Assembly (NCBI GenBank): GCA_964057225.1
Contig: OZ059898.1
Span: 5,642,001-5,706,000, forward strand
Reading direction: 5' to 3'
Origin: Auanema rhodensis
Lineage: Eukaryota > Animalia > Nematoda
DNA length: 64,000 nt
Every line of letters begins with the position of its first letter. Position 1 is the first letter of the stretch. The translations under genes and the position numbers were made by a program. This document shows positions 1-22,400 of this stretch, in pieces. The notes under the pieces were generated by a model. The model was not told the origin of the DNA and did not search any database. It saw only the letters and a program-made list of their open reading frames with translations.

Positions 1-613
1 GTATTCGAAAAAATGAAATTTATTTTATTTTAAGCGGAAGAAAGATTTTCATGACCAGGCTATTCTGAGAGGTCATTGAAAGTTTAAAAAAAGGAAATGG
101 AATGAATAGAAAGAAAGAGCTGCAAGCAAGACGTAGAAAAAATAAGTTTTAGATGGCTCAGCTTCTATCATCCTCATCTGATTAGTTTACTCTATTGAAT
201 TTTACTTTTCATTCTCTAATGAGCTTAATATGGATATCAAAAGAATAATCTGACTTAGAAGGGCTCATATGAAAGAAGAAAAGAATTTGTATGTTGGCAG
301 TTGGTAGAGATAATAGAGGAGAAACGAGAACAAGCAAAGAGGATTGTGGGGGGGGGGCAAGAGGAAGGGGGCATTTCGATAGAATAATTTGAAGAATTTT
401 TTTGGTTTCATACTGAATACTAAATGAAAAACATTTAGAATGAAACTGAATATTCAATGATTACTATTATGTTACAAAACAGATTTTTGTCACTGAGTAG
501 ACTATATTTTGAAATAAAAAAAGTTATTTTTATTGAAATATTTATTATTCTTTATTGTATTTCATAGACTAAAACTACATTTCATATTCATAACGAACTA
601 TATAGCTTGCTTC

Positions 614-627
614 GTTGCCATGGTAAA
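614..627. promoter_or_regulatory. X-box (RFX/DAF-19)-like site, or ATG micro-exon plus splice donor
   Basis: GTTGCCATGGTAAA matches 13 of 14 positions of GTHNYYATRRNAAC, about 240 bp upstream of the exon at 861. The same bases read ATG|gtaaat, which would splice in phase 0 to GCA at 861. Confidence 0.4.
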
Positions 628-860
628 TTCTCTCACTCATCAGCCTAAAGAGAAAAAGATTAATCTCAAACTTAAATAAGTGAATGAACAAGATTTTCAA
701 TTAGGAGCTGCAAGAAATAATTAATTCAATTTCTAGTCTTAACGTTAAAAAAAGAACAATTGATAGTGGTATTATACATATATCTAAATATAGCTATGTG
801 GTTTTGAAACAAGAAAAAAACGTTTATTTTCTCAGCAAAATATTTTTTTTAATATTTCAG

Positions 861-2200
861 GCATATGATTACTCAGAAGAAATAAGCCAACATCAAAATT
901 CTAAGCGTGATAATCAATCTCCTACACTTGTGAAACAGAAAACAATCGAAAGTGTTCGATTTGTGATTGAACCTACAGAAATTGAAGATAATGTTGAATA
1001 TAGAAGTCCCTCGACTTCTGAAATATCGGGATCTTCAACTTCGGAACGGCTATCGTGTTCACCTACAGCTGCCGGCGGATTTGCACATCCTATTGTTGGA
1101 TATCAAGCTGCATCTGGTGGCAGTGGAATGACTTCAACTGAATCTGTAGAATCGAATGGTATATGGATGAAGCAGATTAACTCAGAAGCAGATGTAGTAC
1201 CTGTTAATAACCAAACTGAAGTGGTCAATGAGCCAGAACGAGAAAATGAAATATCTAAAACGGAAAATGAGCATTTACAGAATATTGTTCGAACTATCAT
1301 TCAGATTTTGTCATCACAATTTCAATGTGCCACTGTACTTACACTTGACATAGGTAACAGGTATGTGCTTCTTTATTTTTTAAAAAAGAAAATTCTTTTA
1401 GTGTAATTCTTAAAATAAGGGGTTTCGAAATTTTACATACCATTTGCTCTATCAACGTGTAATTATAAATGTTTTCGAATAACAACCTTCCCATCTAGCA
1501 GTTTCTTTTTCCTTTCTATATTACAAAAAAAATACTTTTGAGATTCAATCACGAGGGGTTAAAGGTAACCCAAATGAACAGTTGTTGCGTTGATAGAATA
1601 GTCACAAAAGTAAAAGATGTAGGAAAGATGAAAATCTTTTACGAGAAACAAAAAGGCCAGCAGCCGTCTCTCTGCAATTACAATAAGTGAGAGAGAAAGG
1701 CTGAAGATAGAGACAAGAAAAAGCAACAGTTGACGTTTTGGAGATTAGGCGACGAATAAGACCGGATAGATGAGAAAACAGCTTCCTTTTCATTTCGCAT
1801 ACAATTGCTCAACCAAATACTTCTCTATAGTTGAGAAAAAGGGATAATGAATGGGAAAAAAGGGAGTAAGGGAGTGGGGAAGTAGACAATTCCGATAACA
1901 TTTCCAAGTAAAAATTTTTTTTCCAAAAAAAAAGAAAGTTTTATAGTAAATCCTATAACATTCTCAATTTTTAGCTTGCGAGACCTCATAGTAGCATTAG
2001 CAAGACAACATTTCCAGCGAGTTCCAACAGATCTTTTGCATTCTCAGTTAGGTTCTGTTGTTTTAGATGTTGTAAATCCATACTTGGATATGCCAATTCA
2101 ACCAAATCGGAAACAATTTCTTAGAGAATTATCTGTTATACTATATAATGAACTGTCATTTTTCCATATTTTAAATTCTGTACAATCAATACCTGATTAA
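861..2200 (+). CDS. PCM1 C-terminal-domain-like protein (exons 861-1360 and 1975-2200; 5' end uncertain, possibly ATG at 620-622 or outside the window)
   Basis: Acceptor atttcag|861; donor AG|gtatgt after 1360; acceptor ttttag|1975. The phase-2 junction AG+C gives Ser in frame, with stop TAA at 2198-2200 and AATAAA just after. The spliced C-terminus ...NIVRTIIQILSSQ...GNSLRDLIVALARQ...LLHSQLGSVVLD...FLRELSVILYNELSFFHILNSV aligns by eye with recalled vertebrate PCM1 (...IKAIMKEVIPFL...SVRRMVLTLTQQ...FFHKQLGSILQD...LLVEISEVLFNELAFFKLMQDL). Confidence 0.75.
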
Positions 2201-2313
2201 TTATAAATAAATTGAATGTATTTGTAAAATGCATTTATAATAATATAGTATATATAAATAATTGATGAATAAAGATTTAGAAATTCTACAATTTTTTGAA
2301 AAAATACAAATAT

Positions 2314-4266
2314 TCAATTCCGAAGTATTTGGAAAGTATATGGTTTTACATTATTCTTAGTTAAATAATCTTTCATTAATAACAAAACATTCTCTTTGCT
2401 TGCCTGAAATTATAAAATAAATAATTAAAAAGAAAAAGAATTATATATTCAAACTTTTAAATTGATATCCAATTGTAGAAAAGATTCATTTATATTTTCT
2501 ATCATTTTAGTTTTGATTACATATCCAATATAATGTGGATGATCTGTTATAATGGAGCGAAGACAAGCTATAGATCTTTCCACAATTCGAATATCATTAG
2601 AATTGAGTAAAAATGGAAAAATAGTTATAATTCCTATAAATGTTATGATCATTAATCTTTGAAAAAAAAGATCAATGTTATACCTGCTGCAACTAGATAT
2701 GAATTTCTTTCTGGACTAGCAGCAGTGAGCATATTAGCCAATGTCCATAAACATTCCTATGTAAAGTTCTTTAAAAAATTATTTTTTCTCATATATTTGA
2801 TACTTTCTGCATTTTATTATCATTTGCATCATCAGCTGCTCCTCTCATTATATGCTTGAAGATTTGATTATCTTCAAAGAGACAATCAACATGATTTACA
2901 TTTCCGGCGGCAACATTTGAACAAATCCAAGCAGCTTCTCTGCTTAAATATCGCAAAGGAGATTTCAATGCTTTCAGCTATAAATAATTAACTTATTAGA
3001 ATAAATATATAATCAATATTAACAATAGTGTTATAGAATTGTGGATGTGATAATACTACTTCAGTTTGACGATCATTACCAGTTGCTATATTTCCTAATA
3101 TCCTTAAGCATCCGTGCATATAAGTAAGATCATTCTAAATATATGTCAATTAATAAGGAAAGACGAAAGCAAGAATAAAAACCTTATTAAAAAGAATTAC
3201 AATGTGATCTATAAGTTGTTCTTGACTGGTTATTACTTCAATCTATTTTATTTAAATTTATATTATAATAATTCAAATATTAATAACTACCTGTCTTCCT
3301 GTATTCATATCATCAGCTAAAGCAGCTATTGCCCATAAACAGTCTTTTATGATAAAAGGTGATGAAGGAAACATTATCATTGTTTGATGAAAGCCTTTAA
3401 CTAATTCAACAACAACCTTAAACATATCAGCAACACAGGATGCTTGAAAGAATTTCTCACCATTATCGGAAGATTTGTAATTCCACCACGTACTATGTTT
3501 AGAGCGCACCATACTATGTTTCGAACAACTTTAACCTCTTTTCCATATTCTTTAGATAATAATATATCTCCTATTAACTATAACAAAATTAATGTAAAAT
3601 TGAATATAAATATACTTCTAGAATTGGGTTATCTCTACATTTTTGTTTACAATCACTACAATCTGCGGCTACGTTACCTACAGCCCAAAGTGCTTGAGCT
3701 CTTAATTGACTTCCACGCGGGCTGACCAATGCCAATTCGAATAGGGTCGCAACGGCATTCTAAAATTAATTTTTCAAATACTTAAAAAATATTTCAACTA
3801 CTTGTTCAACAATCAAATGACACATATCATTGGAAATACAAGCTAAATTGGTTAAAATCCAGGCTGCATCAACTAATCTAAGCTCATTTCCTCCATCACT
3901 ACACAGTTCCAATGATTCACCTTCTATATATTCCAATAAACTACTAATCTGAATTTTAAGATTAATTAAGAAAATAATCCAAGCATGTTCAAATCACAAG
4001 CTTTGAATAATCTGATATTTCAGCATTTTGTTCTTCAGACGAGAAGGCCTGACGAAAATAAAGAATAGCAGACTCCTGATTATAATAATTTCAATATTTC
4101 AAAATGTCATTATAATTACTTACTTTTGCAGCTTTTGATGTATTTTCTGTTAATAAACTTAAATAGTTAGCAGTTTCCGATATAGTATTAATTTTCTTCA
4201 TTTATATATGAATAATTAATATATTTGATGATTTCTTACCGTATATGATGAAGTATGTCTACTCAT
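2314..4266 (-). CDS. Divergent importin-alpha-like armadillo-repeat protein, multi-exon
   Basis: Spliced exons give successive ARM helix-3 motifs: AAWILTNLA, ALWAVGNVAAD, IVWCALNIVRG, CLWAIAALAD, LRILGNIATGNDRQT, REAAWICSNVAAGN, ECLWTLANM. These match the importin-alpha WxxxN series. ATG at 4266 follows an acceptor-like ttttgaag; the last exon ends ...YTFQILRN TGA (2316-2314). The first-exon junctions are less certain. Confidence 0.85.
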
Positions 4267-4793
4267 AGCTTCAAAATAATATCCGACCAATTACAACAGA
4301 AATGGAGACGTGAATGAGACATGTGATCACGTGTTAAACGTGAATTATCTTGTATTTATGAAATATATTTATAATTACCTTTTTGGAATTTCTATATAAT
4401 AATAATTTAAATATAGTTATATAAGTAATATTTATTTTTTTAATTCTATGAAAACTACATAGAATTCGATTGTCCCGCACATCAAAAGTGACGAAATGTA
4501 TGAAAAAATCATAATGGCAATGTATTGAGTAGCACAGACAAAAAACTTTTCAAAATGAAAAAACAAACATCTGTACAAAGCAAAATGTTAAGAAATATAT
4601 AAATTATATATATATAAATATATTAAATTCTATTTTTTTTGAAAAGAAAATATGAAAAGCTAAGAATTGTTGGTTATGAGAGAAAAAATTAATTAAAGAA
4701 TTACATTAATCAGATCATGTTGTCAGTGGAATGTAAGTCTTATGTTGACTTTAAAAGGCACAATATGCTTATTAACTGACCATTTGATGACAT

Positions 4794-16473: not shown

Positions 16474-19400
16474 TTAACGGTTCTTCAAGCAAACTTGGCA
16501 TCTGGACACACGATCCTTGATAACTCCATACTTGAGAGTCTGGGGCATTGGCTTGCGGAATTGCTTATCCTACAAAATTATCGATTATTACACAAAAATG
16601 AAAAAAAAATGAAATTAAAAAGATTTCACTAATACTTACTTGATCAACAATAGCCATCCAGAATCCGTGATTGGTGGCATAGTAGTTACATGTTCCTATT
16701 CCGTGACATTCGATGAATGGCACAGCACGGAAGTGCTCCATACAGGAGCCAGGAGATTGAAGAGACTGTCCAGTACCTTCAGCTCCAGCAGCAGTATGCT
16801 GAATAATAAGATTAATACTTAATTTTAGATGAATAAAAGCATACCATAACGAATGAATAACCAGACCAGAGACCACTCCAACCAGCTGGACATTCTGGGA
16901 TCTTTGTATCTTGTGAATGAACAGCGATGATTTGTGTTGGAACTTCACATACGGCACATCTAGAAACGTATGGCCGGATGGAGCTTCCACTAACCTGAAG
17001 CATTATAAGTGTTTTAGAAAAAGATTTTTTTTAGAAATTCATACTGGGTTCATGGTTGATGTCATTGGTTCCTCGGTACTAAGCCAGTATGAATAGTCAT
17101 TTCTGGATGATATGTGACAGACGGAATTAAGGTTACAGAACATGAAAGGCATGGTATTGAATCTAGATAAACATGATCCTGGTTGTCCTGAAATTTTTTT
17201 TGCTTTAAATTAAATTAAAATTTTTCCTCACCAAGATCTTGACCGCTGGCTCTTCCATTTCCTTGTACGTATAGAAGGGAATATCCAGTCCAAAGAGGTT
17301 GAGCACCATTTGGACACTGAGGAACATCAACAGTCTGTGAATGCTTAGTGAAGGTGAATCCACGACTAGGAGCCCATCCTCCTGGAGTTCCAGGATAACC
17401 GGGTTGACCAGGTTGTCCTTGAAGACCGGGACGTCCGGGCTGTCCACGTTCTCCGGAGTTTCCAGGCTCTCCGGGTATTCCAGATGAACCTGATGGTCCT
17501 GGATATCCGTCCTGTCCAGAGCTTCCAGGGTATCCAGATTTTCCTGGTGGTCCAGGAAGACCTGGAGATCCATTTTCTCCGGGATATCCTTTTTCTCCTG
17601 GGTAGCCAGGCTCTCCTGGTTCTCCTTGAGGATTACGTTGTTCGAATGGTGCTGGAAGACCTGGTGGTCCAGTTGGTCCTGGTCTTCCTGGAAGTCCATC
17701 CAAACCATCAACTCCGGGTTGCCCATCATCTCCTAAAAAGCGAACTTAATTAAACATAACAAGTGTTTCAATTACCTCTATCTCCCTTGTATCCTGGGGC
17801 TCCTGGAGCTCCTGGGTACCCATCATCTCCACGGTGACCATTAACTCCAGGAAGACCGGCATCTCCATTTTGTCCTGGTCCTCCTGGCATACCTGGGCTT
17901 CCAGGATAACCTGGTAATCCTTCTTCACCGCAATCTCCGTCAGGACCAGGAAGTCCTGGGAGTCCGTCAGAACCAGGATAACCTGGGGCTCCATCATGTC
18001 CTCGTTTTCCATCGATTCCAACAAGACCAGGCTCTCCGATAACTCCTGGTAATCCAGAATCTCCGTGTGGTCCCGGTAATCCAGGAGGTCCTGGATATCC
18101 TTCGTCTCCGCAATCTCCTTCAAGACCAGGTTGTCCTGGCATTCCATCAGGGCCGGGATAGCCACTAGGTCCAGCAGGTCCGGCAGGACCATATGTATCC
18201 TGTCCTGGAGCTCCAGGAAGACCATCATCTCCTGGAAGTCCGGGAAGACCTGGTTGTCCATCATTTCCAGGATAGCCATCGATTCCAGAGTCTCCGGGCT
18301 GTCCAGGTAAACCAGCAGCTCCTTCACGTCCAGGTAAACCGGAATCTCCTGGATATCCAACGGGTCCTGGCAATCCAATATCTCCCTGTTAATAAAAAAT
18401 AATTTAAAAAGTTAAATTTTGAATCATACAGTTAATCCAGGAAGTCCAGCTTGTCCGGGATAACCATTGATTCCTTGAGCTCCAGTTTCTCCAACAAGTC
18501 CGGGTAATCCAGGTTGTCCTGCAAGTCCAGGAAGACCATTATCCCCAGGAAGACCGGGATAGCCTTTTTCTCCTTGAAGTCCTGCTGGACCCTAAACAAC
18601 GCCAATTAGACCAGATCAAATAATTATTTATTTACGGGATAGCCAGGTTGTCCAGAAAGTCCTGGAAGTCCAACTTCTCCACAATCTCCTTCACTTCCGG
18701 GAATGCCGGGTAATCCTTCACGTCCCTGTTTACCAGGAATTCCAACAAGTCCTGTTTCTCCCTTGGGTCCAGGCATACCAGTCATACCAGGCATACCAGG
18801 AACACCAGGAGTACCGTCCATACCGTCATAGCCAAGATCTCCTGGTTCTCCGCTCATTCCCTTTGGTCCAGGGTAACTGTCTCCAACCTAAAAAAAAATA
18901 TATAAATATTATTAAAGGTGATGGATGCATACATCTCCTGGGTATCCCTTATCTCCAGCAATTCCTTCTTCTCCAACCAATCCGGGTGGTCCATCTGGAC
19001 CAGGTGATCCAATATCTCCAGGTAATCCAGGATATGCCAAAGATCCTGGATCTCCGGGAAGACCTCTTCCTCCAGGAAGTCCAGGTTCACCTGGCTCACC
19101 ACTAAGACCTGGTAATCCATCATTTCCAGGAATTCCAGGGTATCCTAAACCAGTACTTGTAAAAAAGAAGTAAGTTTAATGTTACCATCTTGTCCATTCT
19201 CTCCTACAAGCCCAGGGTAGCCATCTTGACCTTGATCTCCAATTTCTCCTGGTTGCCCATCATATCCAGGTAATCCACTATCTCCAGGAGCACCATGAAG
19301 ACCAGGGAATCCAATGGAACCGTCTTCTCCTGGGAAACCAGGTTGTCCAGGCATTCCGTCAATACCATCTTGTCCTGGGAATCCACTAACTCCAGGTTCT

Positions 19401-22400
19401 CCACAGTCTCCTTCAAGTCCAGGGACTCCATCACGACCAGGATATCCTTCTTTTCCTGGGTATCCATTCTCTCCTGGGGCTCCAGGCAAACCAGGAAGTC
19501 CTTCTTGTCCGGGATATCCATTATCTCCAGGAACTCCCTGAGGACCTGGATATCCTACTTGTCCTGGATATCCATAGCCTGGTTCTCCAACAAGACCTGA
19601 AACAAAACAATAAACAGTTGTTTTCACAAAATATCTAGTAACCTGGTAAACCCGGAAGTCCAGGAAGACCATCATCTCCGAGTTCTCCGCAATCTCCATC
19701 AATGCCGTTGAATCCAACTTCTCCTTGTTGTCCACGGTGGCCAGCATCTCCTGGAGATCCTGGATAACCGGGAAGACCGGAGGCTCCCTTTTCTCCTGGA
19801 ATTCCAGGGAATCCATCTGGCCCAGCCTAAATATTATAATGAAAATAAATATTATCAATTGTAAGCTTACAGGTCCAGGAAGACCAGAGAGTCCATCAGC
19901 TCCAGGCTCTCCTGGCATTCCAGGAAGACCATCAGGTCCTGGAAGTCCTGGTTCTTGATGAAGCATTTGTTGTGGAGCTGGCACTCCAGGTGGTCCTTGA
20001 GCTCCTGGTAATCCAGGGAGTCCATCAGCTCCAACTTCTCCGCATTCTCCTGACTCTCCAGGTTGTCCTGGGTAACTGTCTCCTGGTGGACCTTTTGGAC
20101 CAGGAATTCCAAGCTTAAATATATCAATTTTTCATGAAGAATAATATTGAATTTACCATTCCTTCGCGTCCACGTTTTCCGTCAAGTCCGATCAATCCTT
20201 TTTCTCCACGATAACCGGGCAATCCGGGTTCTCCAGATAATCCAGGAGCTCCTTCACGACCCATCAATCCGGGAAGTCCAGGTAAACCTACATACATAAG
20301 TTTTAATAACATACAGTATATAATCAAATACCTGGAGGTCCTCGTTCACCCTTTAAACCGTCCATTCCAGGAGGATTCTCCATTGGTCCAATTATTTCTC
20401 CAGCTTCTCCCTTAAGTCCGGGGTATCCAGGTATTCCTGGCAATCCAGGAGATCCTGGAATACCATCGCTTCCACCAGGTCCAGGCTGGCCGGGAACTCC
20501 TGGCAGACCACAGTCTCCCATTTCTCCGTCAGGTCCTGGAGGACCAGGATATCCATCAACTCCTTGTTGTCCAGGTTCTCCCTTTAAGCCAGGAAGTCCA
20601 TCTGGACAGTATCCACAATCATCTCCTCTTGGTCCATTATCTCCAGAAGTTCCAGGGTATCCATCAAGTCCAATGCGTCCTAATATAATTCACTTAGTTA
20701 TTGTTGAACAATCCAAAAGAATTTACCATTTTCTCCTGGAGGTCCAGCTAATCCCATCATTCCGGGTGGTCCAACTTTGTTTACTCCAGTTCCAGGAAAA
20801 CCTTTTTCTCCTGGCATACCAGCATCTCCAACATCTCCTGGAAGACCAGGGAATCCGTCACGTCCGGATTGTCCGTCAGGTCCAGAGGGTCCCTGTTTAA
20901 GGAAATTACAAATAAAATGTATTATACTGCTTTATTTTTACTTGAACATCATATCCTGGAGGACCATCGTCTCCGGGCATACCACAATCACCGTCATCAC
21001 CAGGGAGGCCAGGGTTTCCAGGGTATCCGGGATAACCGTCTTCTCCGCGATCTCCCTTTTCAGAATATCCAGGAAGTCCAGGAATTCCGTCCGGTCCCTG
21101 TAAAAAGATATGCTTTTCACTTTTCATTAATTTTTAACATACAGAAACTCCTGGAGCTCCAATCGGTCCACGAGGACCAACAGGTCCGGAAAGACCATCG
21201 CGTCCAGCGTCTCCCTTAGGTCCAGGAACTCCATCAAAACCTTGAGGTCCACGTGGTCCAGGATCTCCATGACCTTCACCAAGTGGTCCAGCTGGTCCAG
21301 CCTATTTAAAATAATTTTAAAATATCAAAAGTATTTATTATCATACATCTCCTTCAATTCCAGGGCGTCCGGGATAACCTGGTTCTCCAGCTTCTCCTTT
21401 AGTACCAGTGTAGCCAGGCAATCCAGCCAAACCAGGTTCTCCTTGAGATCCCTTCTCTCCGTAAGCTCCCGTCATTCCATCTTTTCCTCGTTTACCACGA
21501 TTTCCAGCATCTCCTGGATCTCCTTTCTGTCCACGAAGTCCATGATATCCAGGTAATCCTTCTTGACCGGTTGTTCCTGGGGGTCCGACTGGCCCATCAC
21601 GACCTTTTTCTCCCTTCATTCCTATAATGTTCTTATTTTATTAATTTATTCTATAGTTTTAAAATTATACCAAAAGGTCCCATAGGTCCTTGAAGAACTT
21701 CAAGCTCTAATGGAGCTGAAGCTCCTGGGAAATATCCTGGAGGTCCAGAAGGTCCGGCAAGACCTTGCATACCCTTTTCTCCCTTAACACCAGGTGTTCG
21801 GATACCCATGCGTCCCTTCTCTCCAATAGGTCCGGGAAAACCTGGTGGACCATATGGACCGGGATCTCCCTTAGTACCCTTGTGTCCGGGGTATCCATTA
21901 TGACCGGGTGTACCAGGTTGTCCAGGAATACCTGGCTCTCCCGGTTCTCCACGTCTTCCAACAGAATTGATACCTGCAATATGGATGAAATTAGTTAATA
22001 TTTATTAATAACTGATCTGACCTCCTTCACCAGGAAGACCGGGTGTTCCATGTCGTCCAGCATTTCCTGTTGGTCCTGGCATTCCTGGAAGTCCAGCCAA
22101 ACCAGGTCGTCCAGGGAAACCCTAAAAACAAATTACAAGCATTAAAATCGTCGATACAGTTTAATTTTAATTCCGATTCTAGATTCAATTTCTCAGGTTT
22201 TTCTTAAAAAAATCATTTTTTTAATGTTTAGTTTTCTTTAATATGATATATCAAACTTGGACCGGCTTCCATTAGAAATCGCTAAGAAGATTCAAGAATA
22301 TGACTCATTCATTGATTTCAAATATCTATCCCACTGGCAAACGTTTATCTTCTCACTTGGCTCCCTCTATATTGCACATCTACTCCCACAACCCTTTCCC

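What the first reader, a model, noticed from the sequence alone, without database searches (positions are those of the whole stretch)
861..2200. Nematode gene carrying a PCM1 (centriolar satellite scaffold) C-terminal-like domain
Seen in sequence: two exons splice in phase and end in about 100 aa containing HSQLGSVVLD and ELSVILYNELSFFHIL. From memory, the conserved PCM1 C-terminal region has HKQLGSILQD and EISEVLFNELAFFKLM at near-identical spacing, and the two preceding helices also align. Established view: PCM1 and classical centriolar satellites are generally described as absent from C. elegans. Inference: this nematode keeps a PCM1-family protein that ends right at this domain, which could mean a satellite-like or ciliary trafficking system in a lineage with only sensory cilia. 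I cannot tell whether such nematode homologues are already catalogued.
Basis: partly seen in the sequence, partly recalled or inferred. Interest (0 to 1): 0.85.

Follow-up and report, generated by a model that had tools for sequence, protein, structure and literature searches.

The report
Nematode PCM1 orthologue, last two exons
The region holds the last two exons of a nematode version of PCM1, the scaffold protein of centriolar satellites; the match is real, but nematode PCM1 genes are already published and named in public databases, so this is an ordinary new member of a known family.

Summary
Observation confirmed. Exons 861-1360 and 1975-2200 join in phase. Spliced transcript contigs from four runs of one study carry exactly this junction. 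Both quoted motifs are present.

The last exon alone hits Pfam PCM1_C at E 1.3e-4, which is below the gathering score. A profile of it with its rhabditid relatives matches a spirurid plus canonical PCM1 profile at E 3.8e-12 (97.6% probability).

The gene is orthologous to a 926-aa Auanema protein. They share colinear exons, the same last-intron position and phase, and an ARM-repeat gene downstream. The Auanema gene hosts mir-86 in an intron, as is published for C. elegans Y56A3A.7, the published putative PCM1 orthologue.

The protein ends at the domain, as do the nematode homologues recovered here, apart from two fused gene models. The domain models as a four-helix bundle covering positions about 210-319 of the 628-position Pfam model.

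Interpretation partly supported. The homology is real, but nematode PCM1 orthologues are already catalogued (Kuhn 2014; Pachinger 2025; UniProt names). A ciliary role is untested. The nearby X-box-like motif is no more than chance.

This scan also flagged the same gene on the adjoining window (s1-419263).

One lead: the syntenic Caenorhabditis auriculariae gene lacks this domain.

The parts
1..860 (+). 3' part of the intron that precedes the penultimate coding exon; the upstream exons lie outside the window
   Evidence: no contig lies on 1-857 in any of four runs. All four contigs that enter at about 858 carry 255 or more further letters that lie nowhere in the stretch laid (1-4500), so exon A is spliced to an exon before the window start. 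Acceptor ttcag| at 856-860.
861..1360 (+). Penultimate coding exon (166 codons plus 2 bases): a Ser/Thr-rich, acidic linker, then helix 1 and the start of helix 2 of the C-terminal bundle
   Evidence: It aligns colinearly with Auanema P0001 residues 713-848 (E 4e-6). The Auanema exon has the same boundaries (P0001 691-853).
1361..1974 (+). Last intron, 614 bases, GT..AG, phase 2
   Evidence: The joint 1358>1973 (cut +2) is present in all four runs. Auanema has its last intron at the same place and phase, AG|T against AG|C for the Ser codon. Low-depth contigs lie inside it at 1375-1933. No Rfam match.
1975..2200 (+). Last coding exon (74 codons after the split Ser codon, plus the TAA stop): helices 2-4 of the PCM1_C core
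   Evidence: 68% identical to the C-terminal end of P0001, residues 853-925 (96 bits, E 6e-23 in a library of 1.8 billion). An HMM built from spirurid and canonical PCM1 fragments alone finds it at 38.3 bits. Contigs stop at 2195/2196, so the stop codon itself is not covered by RNA.
1233..2185 (+). Span that encodes the four-helix bundle (about 1233-1360 plus 1975-2185), equal to Pfam PCM1_C model positions about 210-319
   Evidence: The AlphaFold2 model of the Auanema orthologue P0001:800-926 has four helices, mean pLDDT 87.5 and pTM 0.74. Pfam aligns P0001:800-926 residues 13-119 to model positions 210-314. The mapping onto the window is by the alignments; the limits are approximate.
2206..2211 (+). 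AATAAA poly(A) signal 6 bases after the stop codon
   Evidence: Read from the sequence; not covered by RNA contigs.
614..627 (.). X-box-like palindrome GTTGCCATGGTAAA inside the upstream intron; not part of the gene model supported here
   Evidence: the X-box pattern with up to one mismatch gives 13 matches in the window against 15.5 expected, so no excess; no RNA contig covers 1-857.
2314..4216 (-). Convergent ARM-repeat gene with introns of 42-48 bases; a conserved neighbour that supports orthology of the locus
   Evidence: tblastx against the Auanema gene L001 25275-27229, exons 47-82% identical, summed E 3e-157. The Auanema product carries Arm / ARM_PUB hits on record. Small CT..AC joints in RNA contigs. 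Single exons give no Pfam hit.

Best explanation
Window 861-2200 holds the last two coding exons of the nematode orthologue of PCM1. This is the gene family that includes C. elegans Y56A3A.7, Brugia Bm10731 and Auanema CAI4229105.1. The rest of the gene lies upstream of the window.

The two exons encode a Ser/Thr-rich acidic linker, which I infer to be disordered, followed by a four-helix bundle of about 110 aa. The bundle corresponds to the most conserved core of Pfam PCM1_C, model positions about 210-319 of 628. The protein stops 5 residues after the bundle, as the nematode homologues recovered here do (0-22 residues after), apart from two fused gene models. Nematode PCM1 is therefore a naturally short form that lacks the second half of the PCM1_C model and the vertebrate tail.

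Shown here: the gene structure, its transcription and splicing, the homology of the domain, and orthology to the Auanema gene.

Inferred from the family: the protein is a coiled-coil scaffold of cytoplasmic, satellite-like granules, and the terminal bundle acts as a conserved protein-binding module. Nothing here tests localisation, partners or a link to cilia.
For: Splicing. Domain homology: the last exon hits only PCM1_C in Pfam (E 1.3e-4). Fifteen of 20 aligned homologues hit PCM1_C and no other family, with spirurid ones above the gathering score at 45-47 bits. Comparing the rhabditid profile with the spirurid plus canonical profile by hhalign gives E 3.8e-12 and 97.6% probability. An HMM that excludes the window finds the last exon at 38.3 bits. 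Orthology: both exons are colinear with the C-terminal 215 aa of Auanema P0001. The last intron has the same position and phase. The same convergent ARM-repeat gene lies downstream. Link to the published C. elegans orthologue: the Auanema gene and its Caenorhabditis auriculariae counterpart both carry mir-86 in the homologous intron, and mir-86 is published as intronic to Y56A3A.7 and its Haemonchus homologue (PMC2835999, PMC3282659). Published orthology of Y56A3A.7 and Bm10731 to PCM1: PMC12094185. Ending at the domain. Fold.
Against: The single-exon Pfam score is below the gathering cut-off, and the full-length rhabditid and strongylid proteins give no whole-protein Pfam hit. The upstream four fifths of the gene are outside the window, so coiled coils and the mir-86 intron could not be checked in this genome; no mir-86 lies in the window. 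RNA contigs end at 2195/2196, so the stop codon and the 3' UTR lack transcript support. For function: the C. elegans reporter is non-neuronal, and C. elegans satellite-like foci are described as forming without an identified PCM1. Fold searches give only generic helical-bundle matches (Foldseek E 0.3 or worse; best Z 8.5), so the structure says nothing about mechanism.
Confidence: 0.88

Rival explanations
1. The gene is a PCM1 orthologue by descent but no longer a satellite scaffold. Nematodes keep only the N-terminal coiled coils and the bundle, and the protein has taken on another, non-centrosomal and non-ciliary role.
For: [quoted passage not shown] SAS-1/SSNA-1 satellite-like foci are described without a PCM1 scaffold. 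Nematode proteins lack everything after model position about 319. The Caenorhabditis auriculariae orthologue has even lost the bundle.
Against: The bundle is conserved across Rhabditina and Spirurina, 68% identical between the window and Auanema while the linker is only 29% identical. That argues for selection on the same module that is conserved from fungi to vertebrates. No nematode PCM1 has been localised or knocked out.
Confidence: 0.3
3. The similarity to PCM1_C is chance between amphipathic helices, and the gene is a nematode-specific protein unrelated to PCM1.
For: The single-exon score is sub-threshold. The language-model atlas search returned only bacterial helical proteins. Fold matches are generic.
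Against: Profile-profile E 3.8e-12. There is an unbroken chain of homologues up to proteins scoring 45-202 bits on PF15717. No competing family was hit. Reciprocal searches have been published.
Confidence: 0.02

Closest known systems
Vertebrate PCM1 (pericentriolar material 1), Pfam PF15717 PCM1_C
   Same: It shares the conserved helical core of PCM1_C, model positions about 210-319, including the ...ILYNELxFF(H/Q)L... helix. It is a long gene that, in the Auanema orthologue, encodes a Glu/Lys-rich N-terminal two thirds that looks like coiled coil by eye (no prediction was run).
   Different: Nematode proteins are about 740-930 aa, and vertebrate PCM1 is about 2000 aa (the latter figure is from my own knowledge). 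They stop at model position about 319 of 628, so they lack the second half of PCM1_C and the vertebrate C-terminal tail. The single-sequence Pfam score is below the gathering cut-off.
C. elegans Y56A3A.7 and Brugia malayi Bm10731 (published putative nematode PCM1 orthologues; Pachinger et al. 2025, Kuhn et al. 2014)
   Same: The same family by transitive evidence. The window gene is orthologous to Auanema P0001, whose gene hosts mir-86 as published for Y56A3A.7. P0001 is 40% identical over 316 aa to the syntenic mir-86 host of Caenorhabditis auriculariae. Filarial and other spirurid homologues align with the last exon.
   Different: The C. elegans and Brugia sequences themselves could not be fetched, so there is no direct alignment. 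The only Caenorhabditis orthologue available (C. auriculariae) lacks the bundle that this gene has.
Drosophila Combover (CMB)
   Same: It is a short, divergent invertebrate PCM1 orthologue whose recognisable homology is largely restricted to the conserved C terminus, part of pfam15717.
   Different: CMB has been localised and knocked out, with cytoplasmic foci and ciliary and centrosomal phenotypes. No nematode member has been.

Membership tests
Pfam PF15717 PCM1_C | Whole-sequence score at or above the gathering cut-off (27.4 bits) | tested here: not met
The last exon alone scores 21.3 bits, E 1.3e-4. The Auanema orthologue's domain scores 21.5 bits.
Pfam PF15717 PCM1_C | Significant profile-level homology to bona fide members | tested here: met
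   hhalign of the rhabditid group (with the window exon) against the spirurid plus canonical group gives E 3.8e-12, 97.6%. An HMM of members scoring 45-202 bits on PF15717 finds the window exon at 38.3 bits. Fifteen of 20 aligned homologues hit PF15717 and nothing else.
Pfam PF15717 PCM1_C | Coverage of the whole 628-position model | tested here: not met
   Only positions about 210-319 are present. The protein ends there, as do the other nematode homologues recovered.
PCM1 orthologue group (nematode branch: Y56A3A.7 / Bm10731) | Colinear orthology with a full-length nematode member, with conserved gene structure and neighbours | tested here: met
   Exons A and B match P0001 residues 713-848 and 851-925. 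The last intron has the same place and phase. The same ARM-repeat gene lies downstream.
PCM1 orthologue group (nematode branch: Y56A3A.7 / Bm10731) | Intronic mir-86 in sense orientation (published for C. elegans and Haemonchus) | tested here: inconclusive
   Present in the Auanema and C. auriculariae orthologues. Not in the window. The homologous intron would lie upstream of the window start.
PCM1 orthologue group | Reciprocal best hit of the full-length protein to human PCM1 | not testable with these tools
   The upstream exons are outside the window and human PCM1 was not retrievable. Reciprocal searches for Y56A3A.7 and Bm10731 are published in PMC12094185.
Centriolar satellite scaffold (functional class) | Forms cytoplasmic granules that hold centrosomal or ciliary clients; loss gives centrosome or cilium defects | not testable with these tools
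   No nematode member has been characterised.

The most novel reading that the evidence does not exclude
The PCM1_C core bundle, the only part of nematode PCM1 that sequence profiles recognise, is kept in this species, Auanema, strongylids and spirurids. It has been lost from the syntenic mir-86 host gene in Caenorhabditis, as seen here in C. auriculariae. That loss would explain why C. elegans is still described as lacking PCM1. Species like this one, not C. elegans, would then be the nematodes in which to test what the conserved bundle does. Nematode PCM1 would also be a natural minimal form that ends exactly at the bundle.
Probability: 0.4. Interest if true: 0.45.

Novelty: new member of a known kind. 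Interest (0 to 1): 0.28.

Why it matters
It adds one more nematode orthologue to a family that is published but uncharacterised in nematodes. The modest value lies in three points.

First, it gives independent support (domain profile, gene structure, mir-86, neighbouring genes) for the contested claim that nematodes have PCM1.

Second, it shows that nematode PCM1 proteins end at a confidently modelled four-helix bundle, which delimits the conserved core of PCM1_C.

Third, it raises the lead that Caenorhabditis may have lost that core. That bears on whether C. elegans satellite-like structures really form without a PCM1-type scaffold.

Tried and rejected
- The language-model atlas search with the last exon returned only bacterial helical and TetR_C-like clusters, which are uninformative.
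- Fold searches gave only generic helical bundles: FAT domain, SRP54 N domain, dynamin stalks and designed bundles. Foldseek against PDB gave E 0.3 or worse. The ESM Atlas shape search gave TM 0.5-0.6 to SRP54_N and unnamed clusters. VIA-align wide gave a best Z of 8.5, under the tool's own bar of about 13 for helical bundles. I therefore make no functional claim from the recurring SRP54_N resemblance.
- A word-indexed search with the Auanema C-terminal region found only the query itself.
- Rfam found no mir-86 or other RNA family in the window at gathering score. In 1-2500 at relaxed threshold it found only a chance SNORD50 match, E 0.9.
- The X-box reading was rejected as chance.
- Single exons of the ARM-repeat neighbour give no Pfam hit. 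One earlier call failed on a stop codon in my coordinates.
- A text search of the supplements of PMC12094185 for the list of sequences in its Fig. 1C found nothing.
- The species of the window was not identified. No protein identical to the window's was found in the collections searched.
- The joined spliced protein was not built or searched; the exons were handled apart by reference.

Full report
**What is in the sequence**

Reading 1-3600 shows four features of the gene's 3' end:
- an acceptor ttcag| before 861 and a donor ag|gtatgt after 1360;
- an acceptor ttttag| before 1975;
- a TAA stop at 2198-2200;
- AATAAA at 2206-2211.

Exon A (861-1360) holds 166 codons plus two bases, ag. With the c at 1975 these form a Ser codon, and the frame then runs on to the stop.

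**Transcript support**

Four public runs from one study hold the stretch. Their contigs behave as RNA.
- All four carry a joint that skips 614 bases with GT..AG ends, which equals the 1360/1975 junction.
- The neighbouring minus-strand gene shows joints of 42-48 bases.
- No contig lies on 1-857. Each contig entering exon A at about 858 continues for 255 to about 1090 letters that lie nowhere in the stretch laid (1-4500). So exon A is spliced to exons upstream of the window start.
- The 30 letters reported before the joint stay open in the frame of exon A (my reading).
- Contigs stop at 2195/2196, so the stop codon and 3' UTR are not covered.

These four runs are one study and count as one piece of support.

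**Is it PCM1_C?**

- Exon A alone hits no Pfam family.
- The last exon hits only PF15717 PCM1_C: E 1.3e-4, 21.3 bits against a gathering score of 27.4, model positions 266-316 of 628.
- An exhaustive HMMER search of 1.8 billion representatives gave four hits. The best is a 926-aa protein of Auanema sp. JU1783 (P0001, CAI4229105.1). It is 68% identical, scores 96 bits, and the match lies at its very C-terminal end. An Ancylostoma fragment is next. A third fragment shares its cluster with Elaeophora elaphi 'PCM1_C domain-containing protein'.
- A profile search added 13 more fragments. Most are spirurid, and their precomputed PF15717 hits are on record.
- Of the 20 aligned sequences, 15 hit PF15717 at E 0.01 or better, and none hits another family.
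- The spirurid sequences score 45-47 bits. One canonical fragment, P0019, scores 202 bits.
- hhalign of the rhabditid-type group, which includes the window exon, against the spirurid plus canonical group gives E 3.8e-12 and 97.6% probability over 54 columns.
- An HMM built only from the spirurid and canonical fragments finds the window's last-exon reading frame at 38.3 bits.

The homology is therefore real, even though a single exon scores under Pfam's cut-off.

**Orthology and gene structure**

- Exon A aligns colinearly with P0001 residues 713-848 (E 4e-6), and the last exon with residues 851-925.
- The alignment runs straight through the splice junction: VLTLDIGN-S-LRDLIVALA in the window against VLTPDICQ-S-LLDLIITLA in Auanema.
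- In the Auanema locus (L001) the gene spans 15.2 kb. Its last two exons have the same boundaries as exons A and B.
- The last intron sits at the same codon and in the same phase, AG|T against AG|C.
- A convergent ARM-repeat gene follows directly in both genomes. By tblastx its exons are 47-82% identical, with a summed E of 3e-157.

I could not read that window.

**Link to the published nematode PCM1**

Pachinger et al. 2025 (PMC12094185) state that Kuhn et al. 2014 identified putative PCM1 orthologues in C. elegans and Drosophila, and that reciprocal BLAST confirms this. Their Table S1 lists Y56A3A.7 and Brugia Bm10731.

Two papers report that mir-86 lies in an intron of Y56A3A.7 and of its Haemonchus homologue. 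Rfam finds mir-86 in two related genes:
- in an intron of the Auanema gene, at 84 bits against a gathering score of 64;
- in the homologous intron of the syntenic Caenorhabditis auriculariae gene P0027, at 77 bits.

P0027 is 40% identical to P0001 over its first 316 residues. It shares the zinc-finger and topoisomerase III genes upstream. Strongylid full-length orthologues carry the UniProt name 'Pericentriolar material 1 protein C-terminal domain-containing protein'.

The window gene therefore belongs to the already catalogued nematode PCM1 family. The field is not unanimous. A 2025 paper calls the C. elegans orthologue putative and uncharacterised. A 2026 preprint still says none has been identified.

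**The protein end and the fold**

The nematode homologues recovered end 0-22 residues after the domain. This holds for the full-length proteins from Auanema, Ancylostoma ceylanicum and Necator, the 370-aa Angiostrongylus model and the spirurid fragments. The only exceptions are gene models fused to a neighbouring gene. Pfam aligns the domain to model positions about 210-319 of 628. Nematode PCM1 thus lacks the second half of that model.

AlphaFold2 on P0001:800-926, with the homologue alignment, gives a four-helix bundle with mean pLDDT 87.5 and pTM 0.74. In the window this maps to about 1233-1360 plus 1975-2185. Fold searches return only generic helical bundles. The structure therefore gives no clue to mechanism.

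**Function**

By homology the protein is most likely a coiled-coil scaffold of cytoplasmic granules, with the bundle as a conserved binding module. This is inference.
- For continued selection on the bundle: it is 68% identical to the Auanema sequence, while the linker is 29% identical.
- Against a role confined to cilia: the C. elegans host-gene reporter is non-neuronal.
- The X-box-like palindrome at 614-627, noted earlier as s1-397795, is no commoner than chance, with 13 matches against 15.5 expected. It also has no transcript support.

**A lead seen on the way**

In C. auriculariae, the gene and the 10 kb downstream of it hold nothing like the bundle. The best HMM score is 2.6 bits, against 34-38 bits in the positive controls, and the locus has no assembly gaps. 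If this holds across Caenorhabditis, it would explain why C. elegans is described as lacking PCM1. C. elegans itself could not be tested here.

**Verdict**

The gene is a real PCM1-family member that ends at the domain, but the family is already known in nematodes. It is a new member of a known kind, of low to moderate interest.

Noticed in passing
L002 10001-22005 (Caenorhabditis auriculariae, GCA_904845305.1): The syntenic mir-86 host gene (P0027, 564 aa) is 40% identical to the Auanema PCM1-like protein over the N-terminal 316 aa. It has no detectable PCM1_C core in the gene or in 10 kb downstream (HMM 2.6 bits or less, controls 34-38 bits, no N gaps). This may be a loss of the domain in Caenorhabditis.
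   Followed up: partly
L001 21465-21537 (+) and L002 18866-18938 (+): mir-86 precursors (Rfam RF00808, 84 and 77 bits) lie in the homologous intron of the Auanema and C. auriculariae PCM1-like genes. This extends the published C. elegans and Haemonchus host-gene relation.
   Followed up: yes
window 1144-1200: Three of four runs also hold a form that skips these 57 bases. The skip is in frame and removes 19 aa of the linker, at roughly 30-45% of local depth. It has non-canonical ends and a 4-base CTGT microhomology. It looks more like a deletion allele or a reverse-transcription artefact than an intron.
   Followed up: no
window 1375-1933: Low-depth contigs (about 5, against 18-29 on the exons) lie inside the last intron in all four runs, while the upstream intron 1-857 has none. 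This could be retention of the last intron or a separate transcript. There is no Rfam match, no repeat copy in the window and no conservation with the Auanema intron.
   Followed up: partly
window 2195-2320: All transcript contigs of the PCM1-like gene end at 2195/2196, just before the stop codon. The stop codons of the two convergent genes are only about 113 bases apart, so their 3' UTRs must be very short or overlap.
   Followed up: no
window 16565-19984 (-): Exons of a type IV collagen gene lie in the GC-richer part of the window: the C4 domain at 16565-16987 (E 2e-16) and collagen triple-helix repeats at 19145-19981 (E 2.5e-27).
   Followed up: no
window 4462 onward: A highly represented transcript starts here: contigs of 4.7 kb at depth 83-151 in two runs. 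It was not identified.
   Followed up: no
P0029 (Heterorhabditis) and P0031 (Necator): Public gene models fuse the PCM1-like gene with its neighbours, topoisomerase III upstream and dolichol kinase downstream. This can mislead name-based annotation, for example 'dolichol kinase' and 'DNA topoisomerase'.
   Followed up: no
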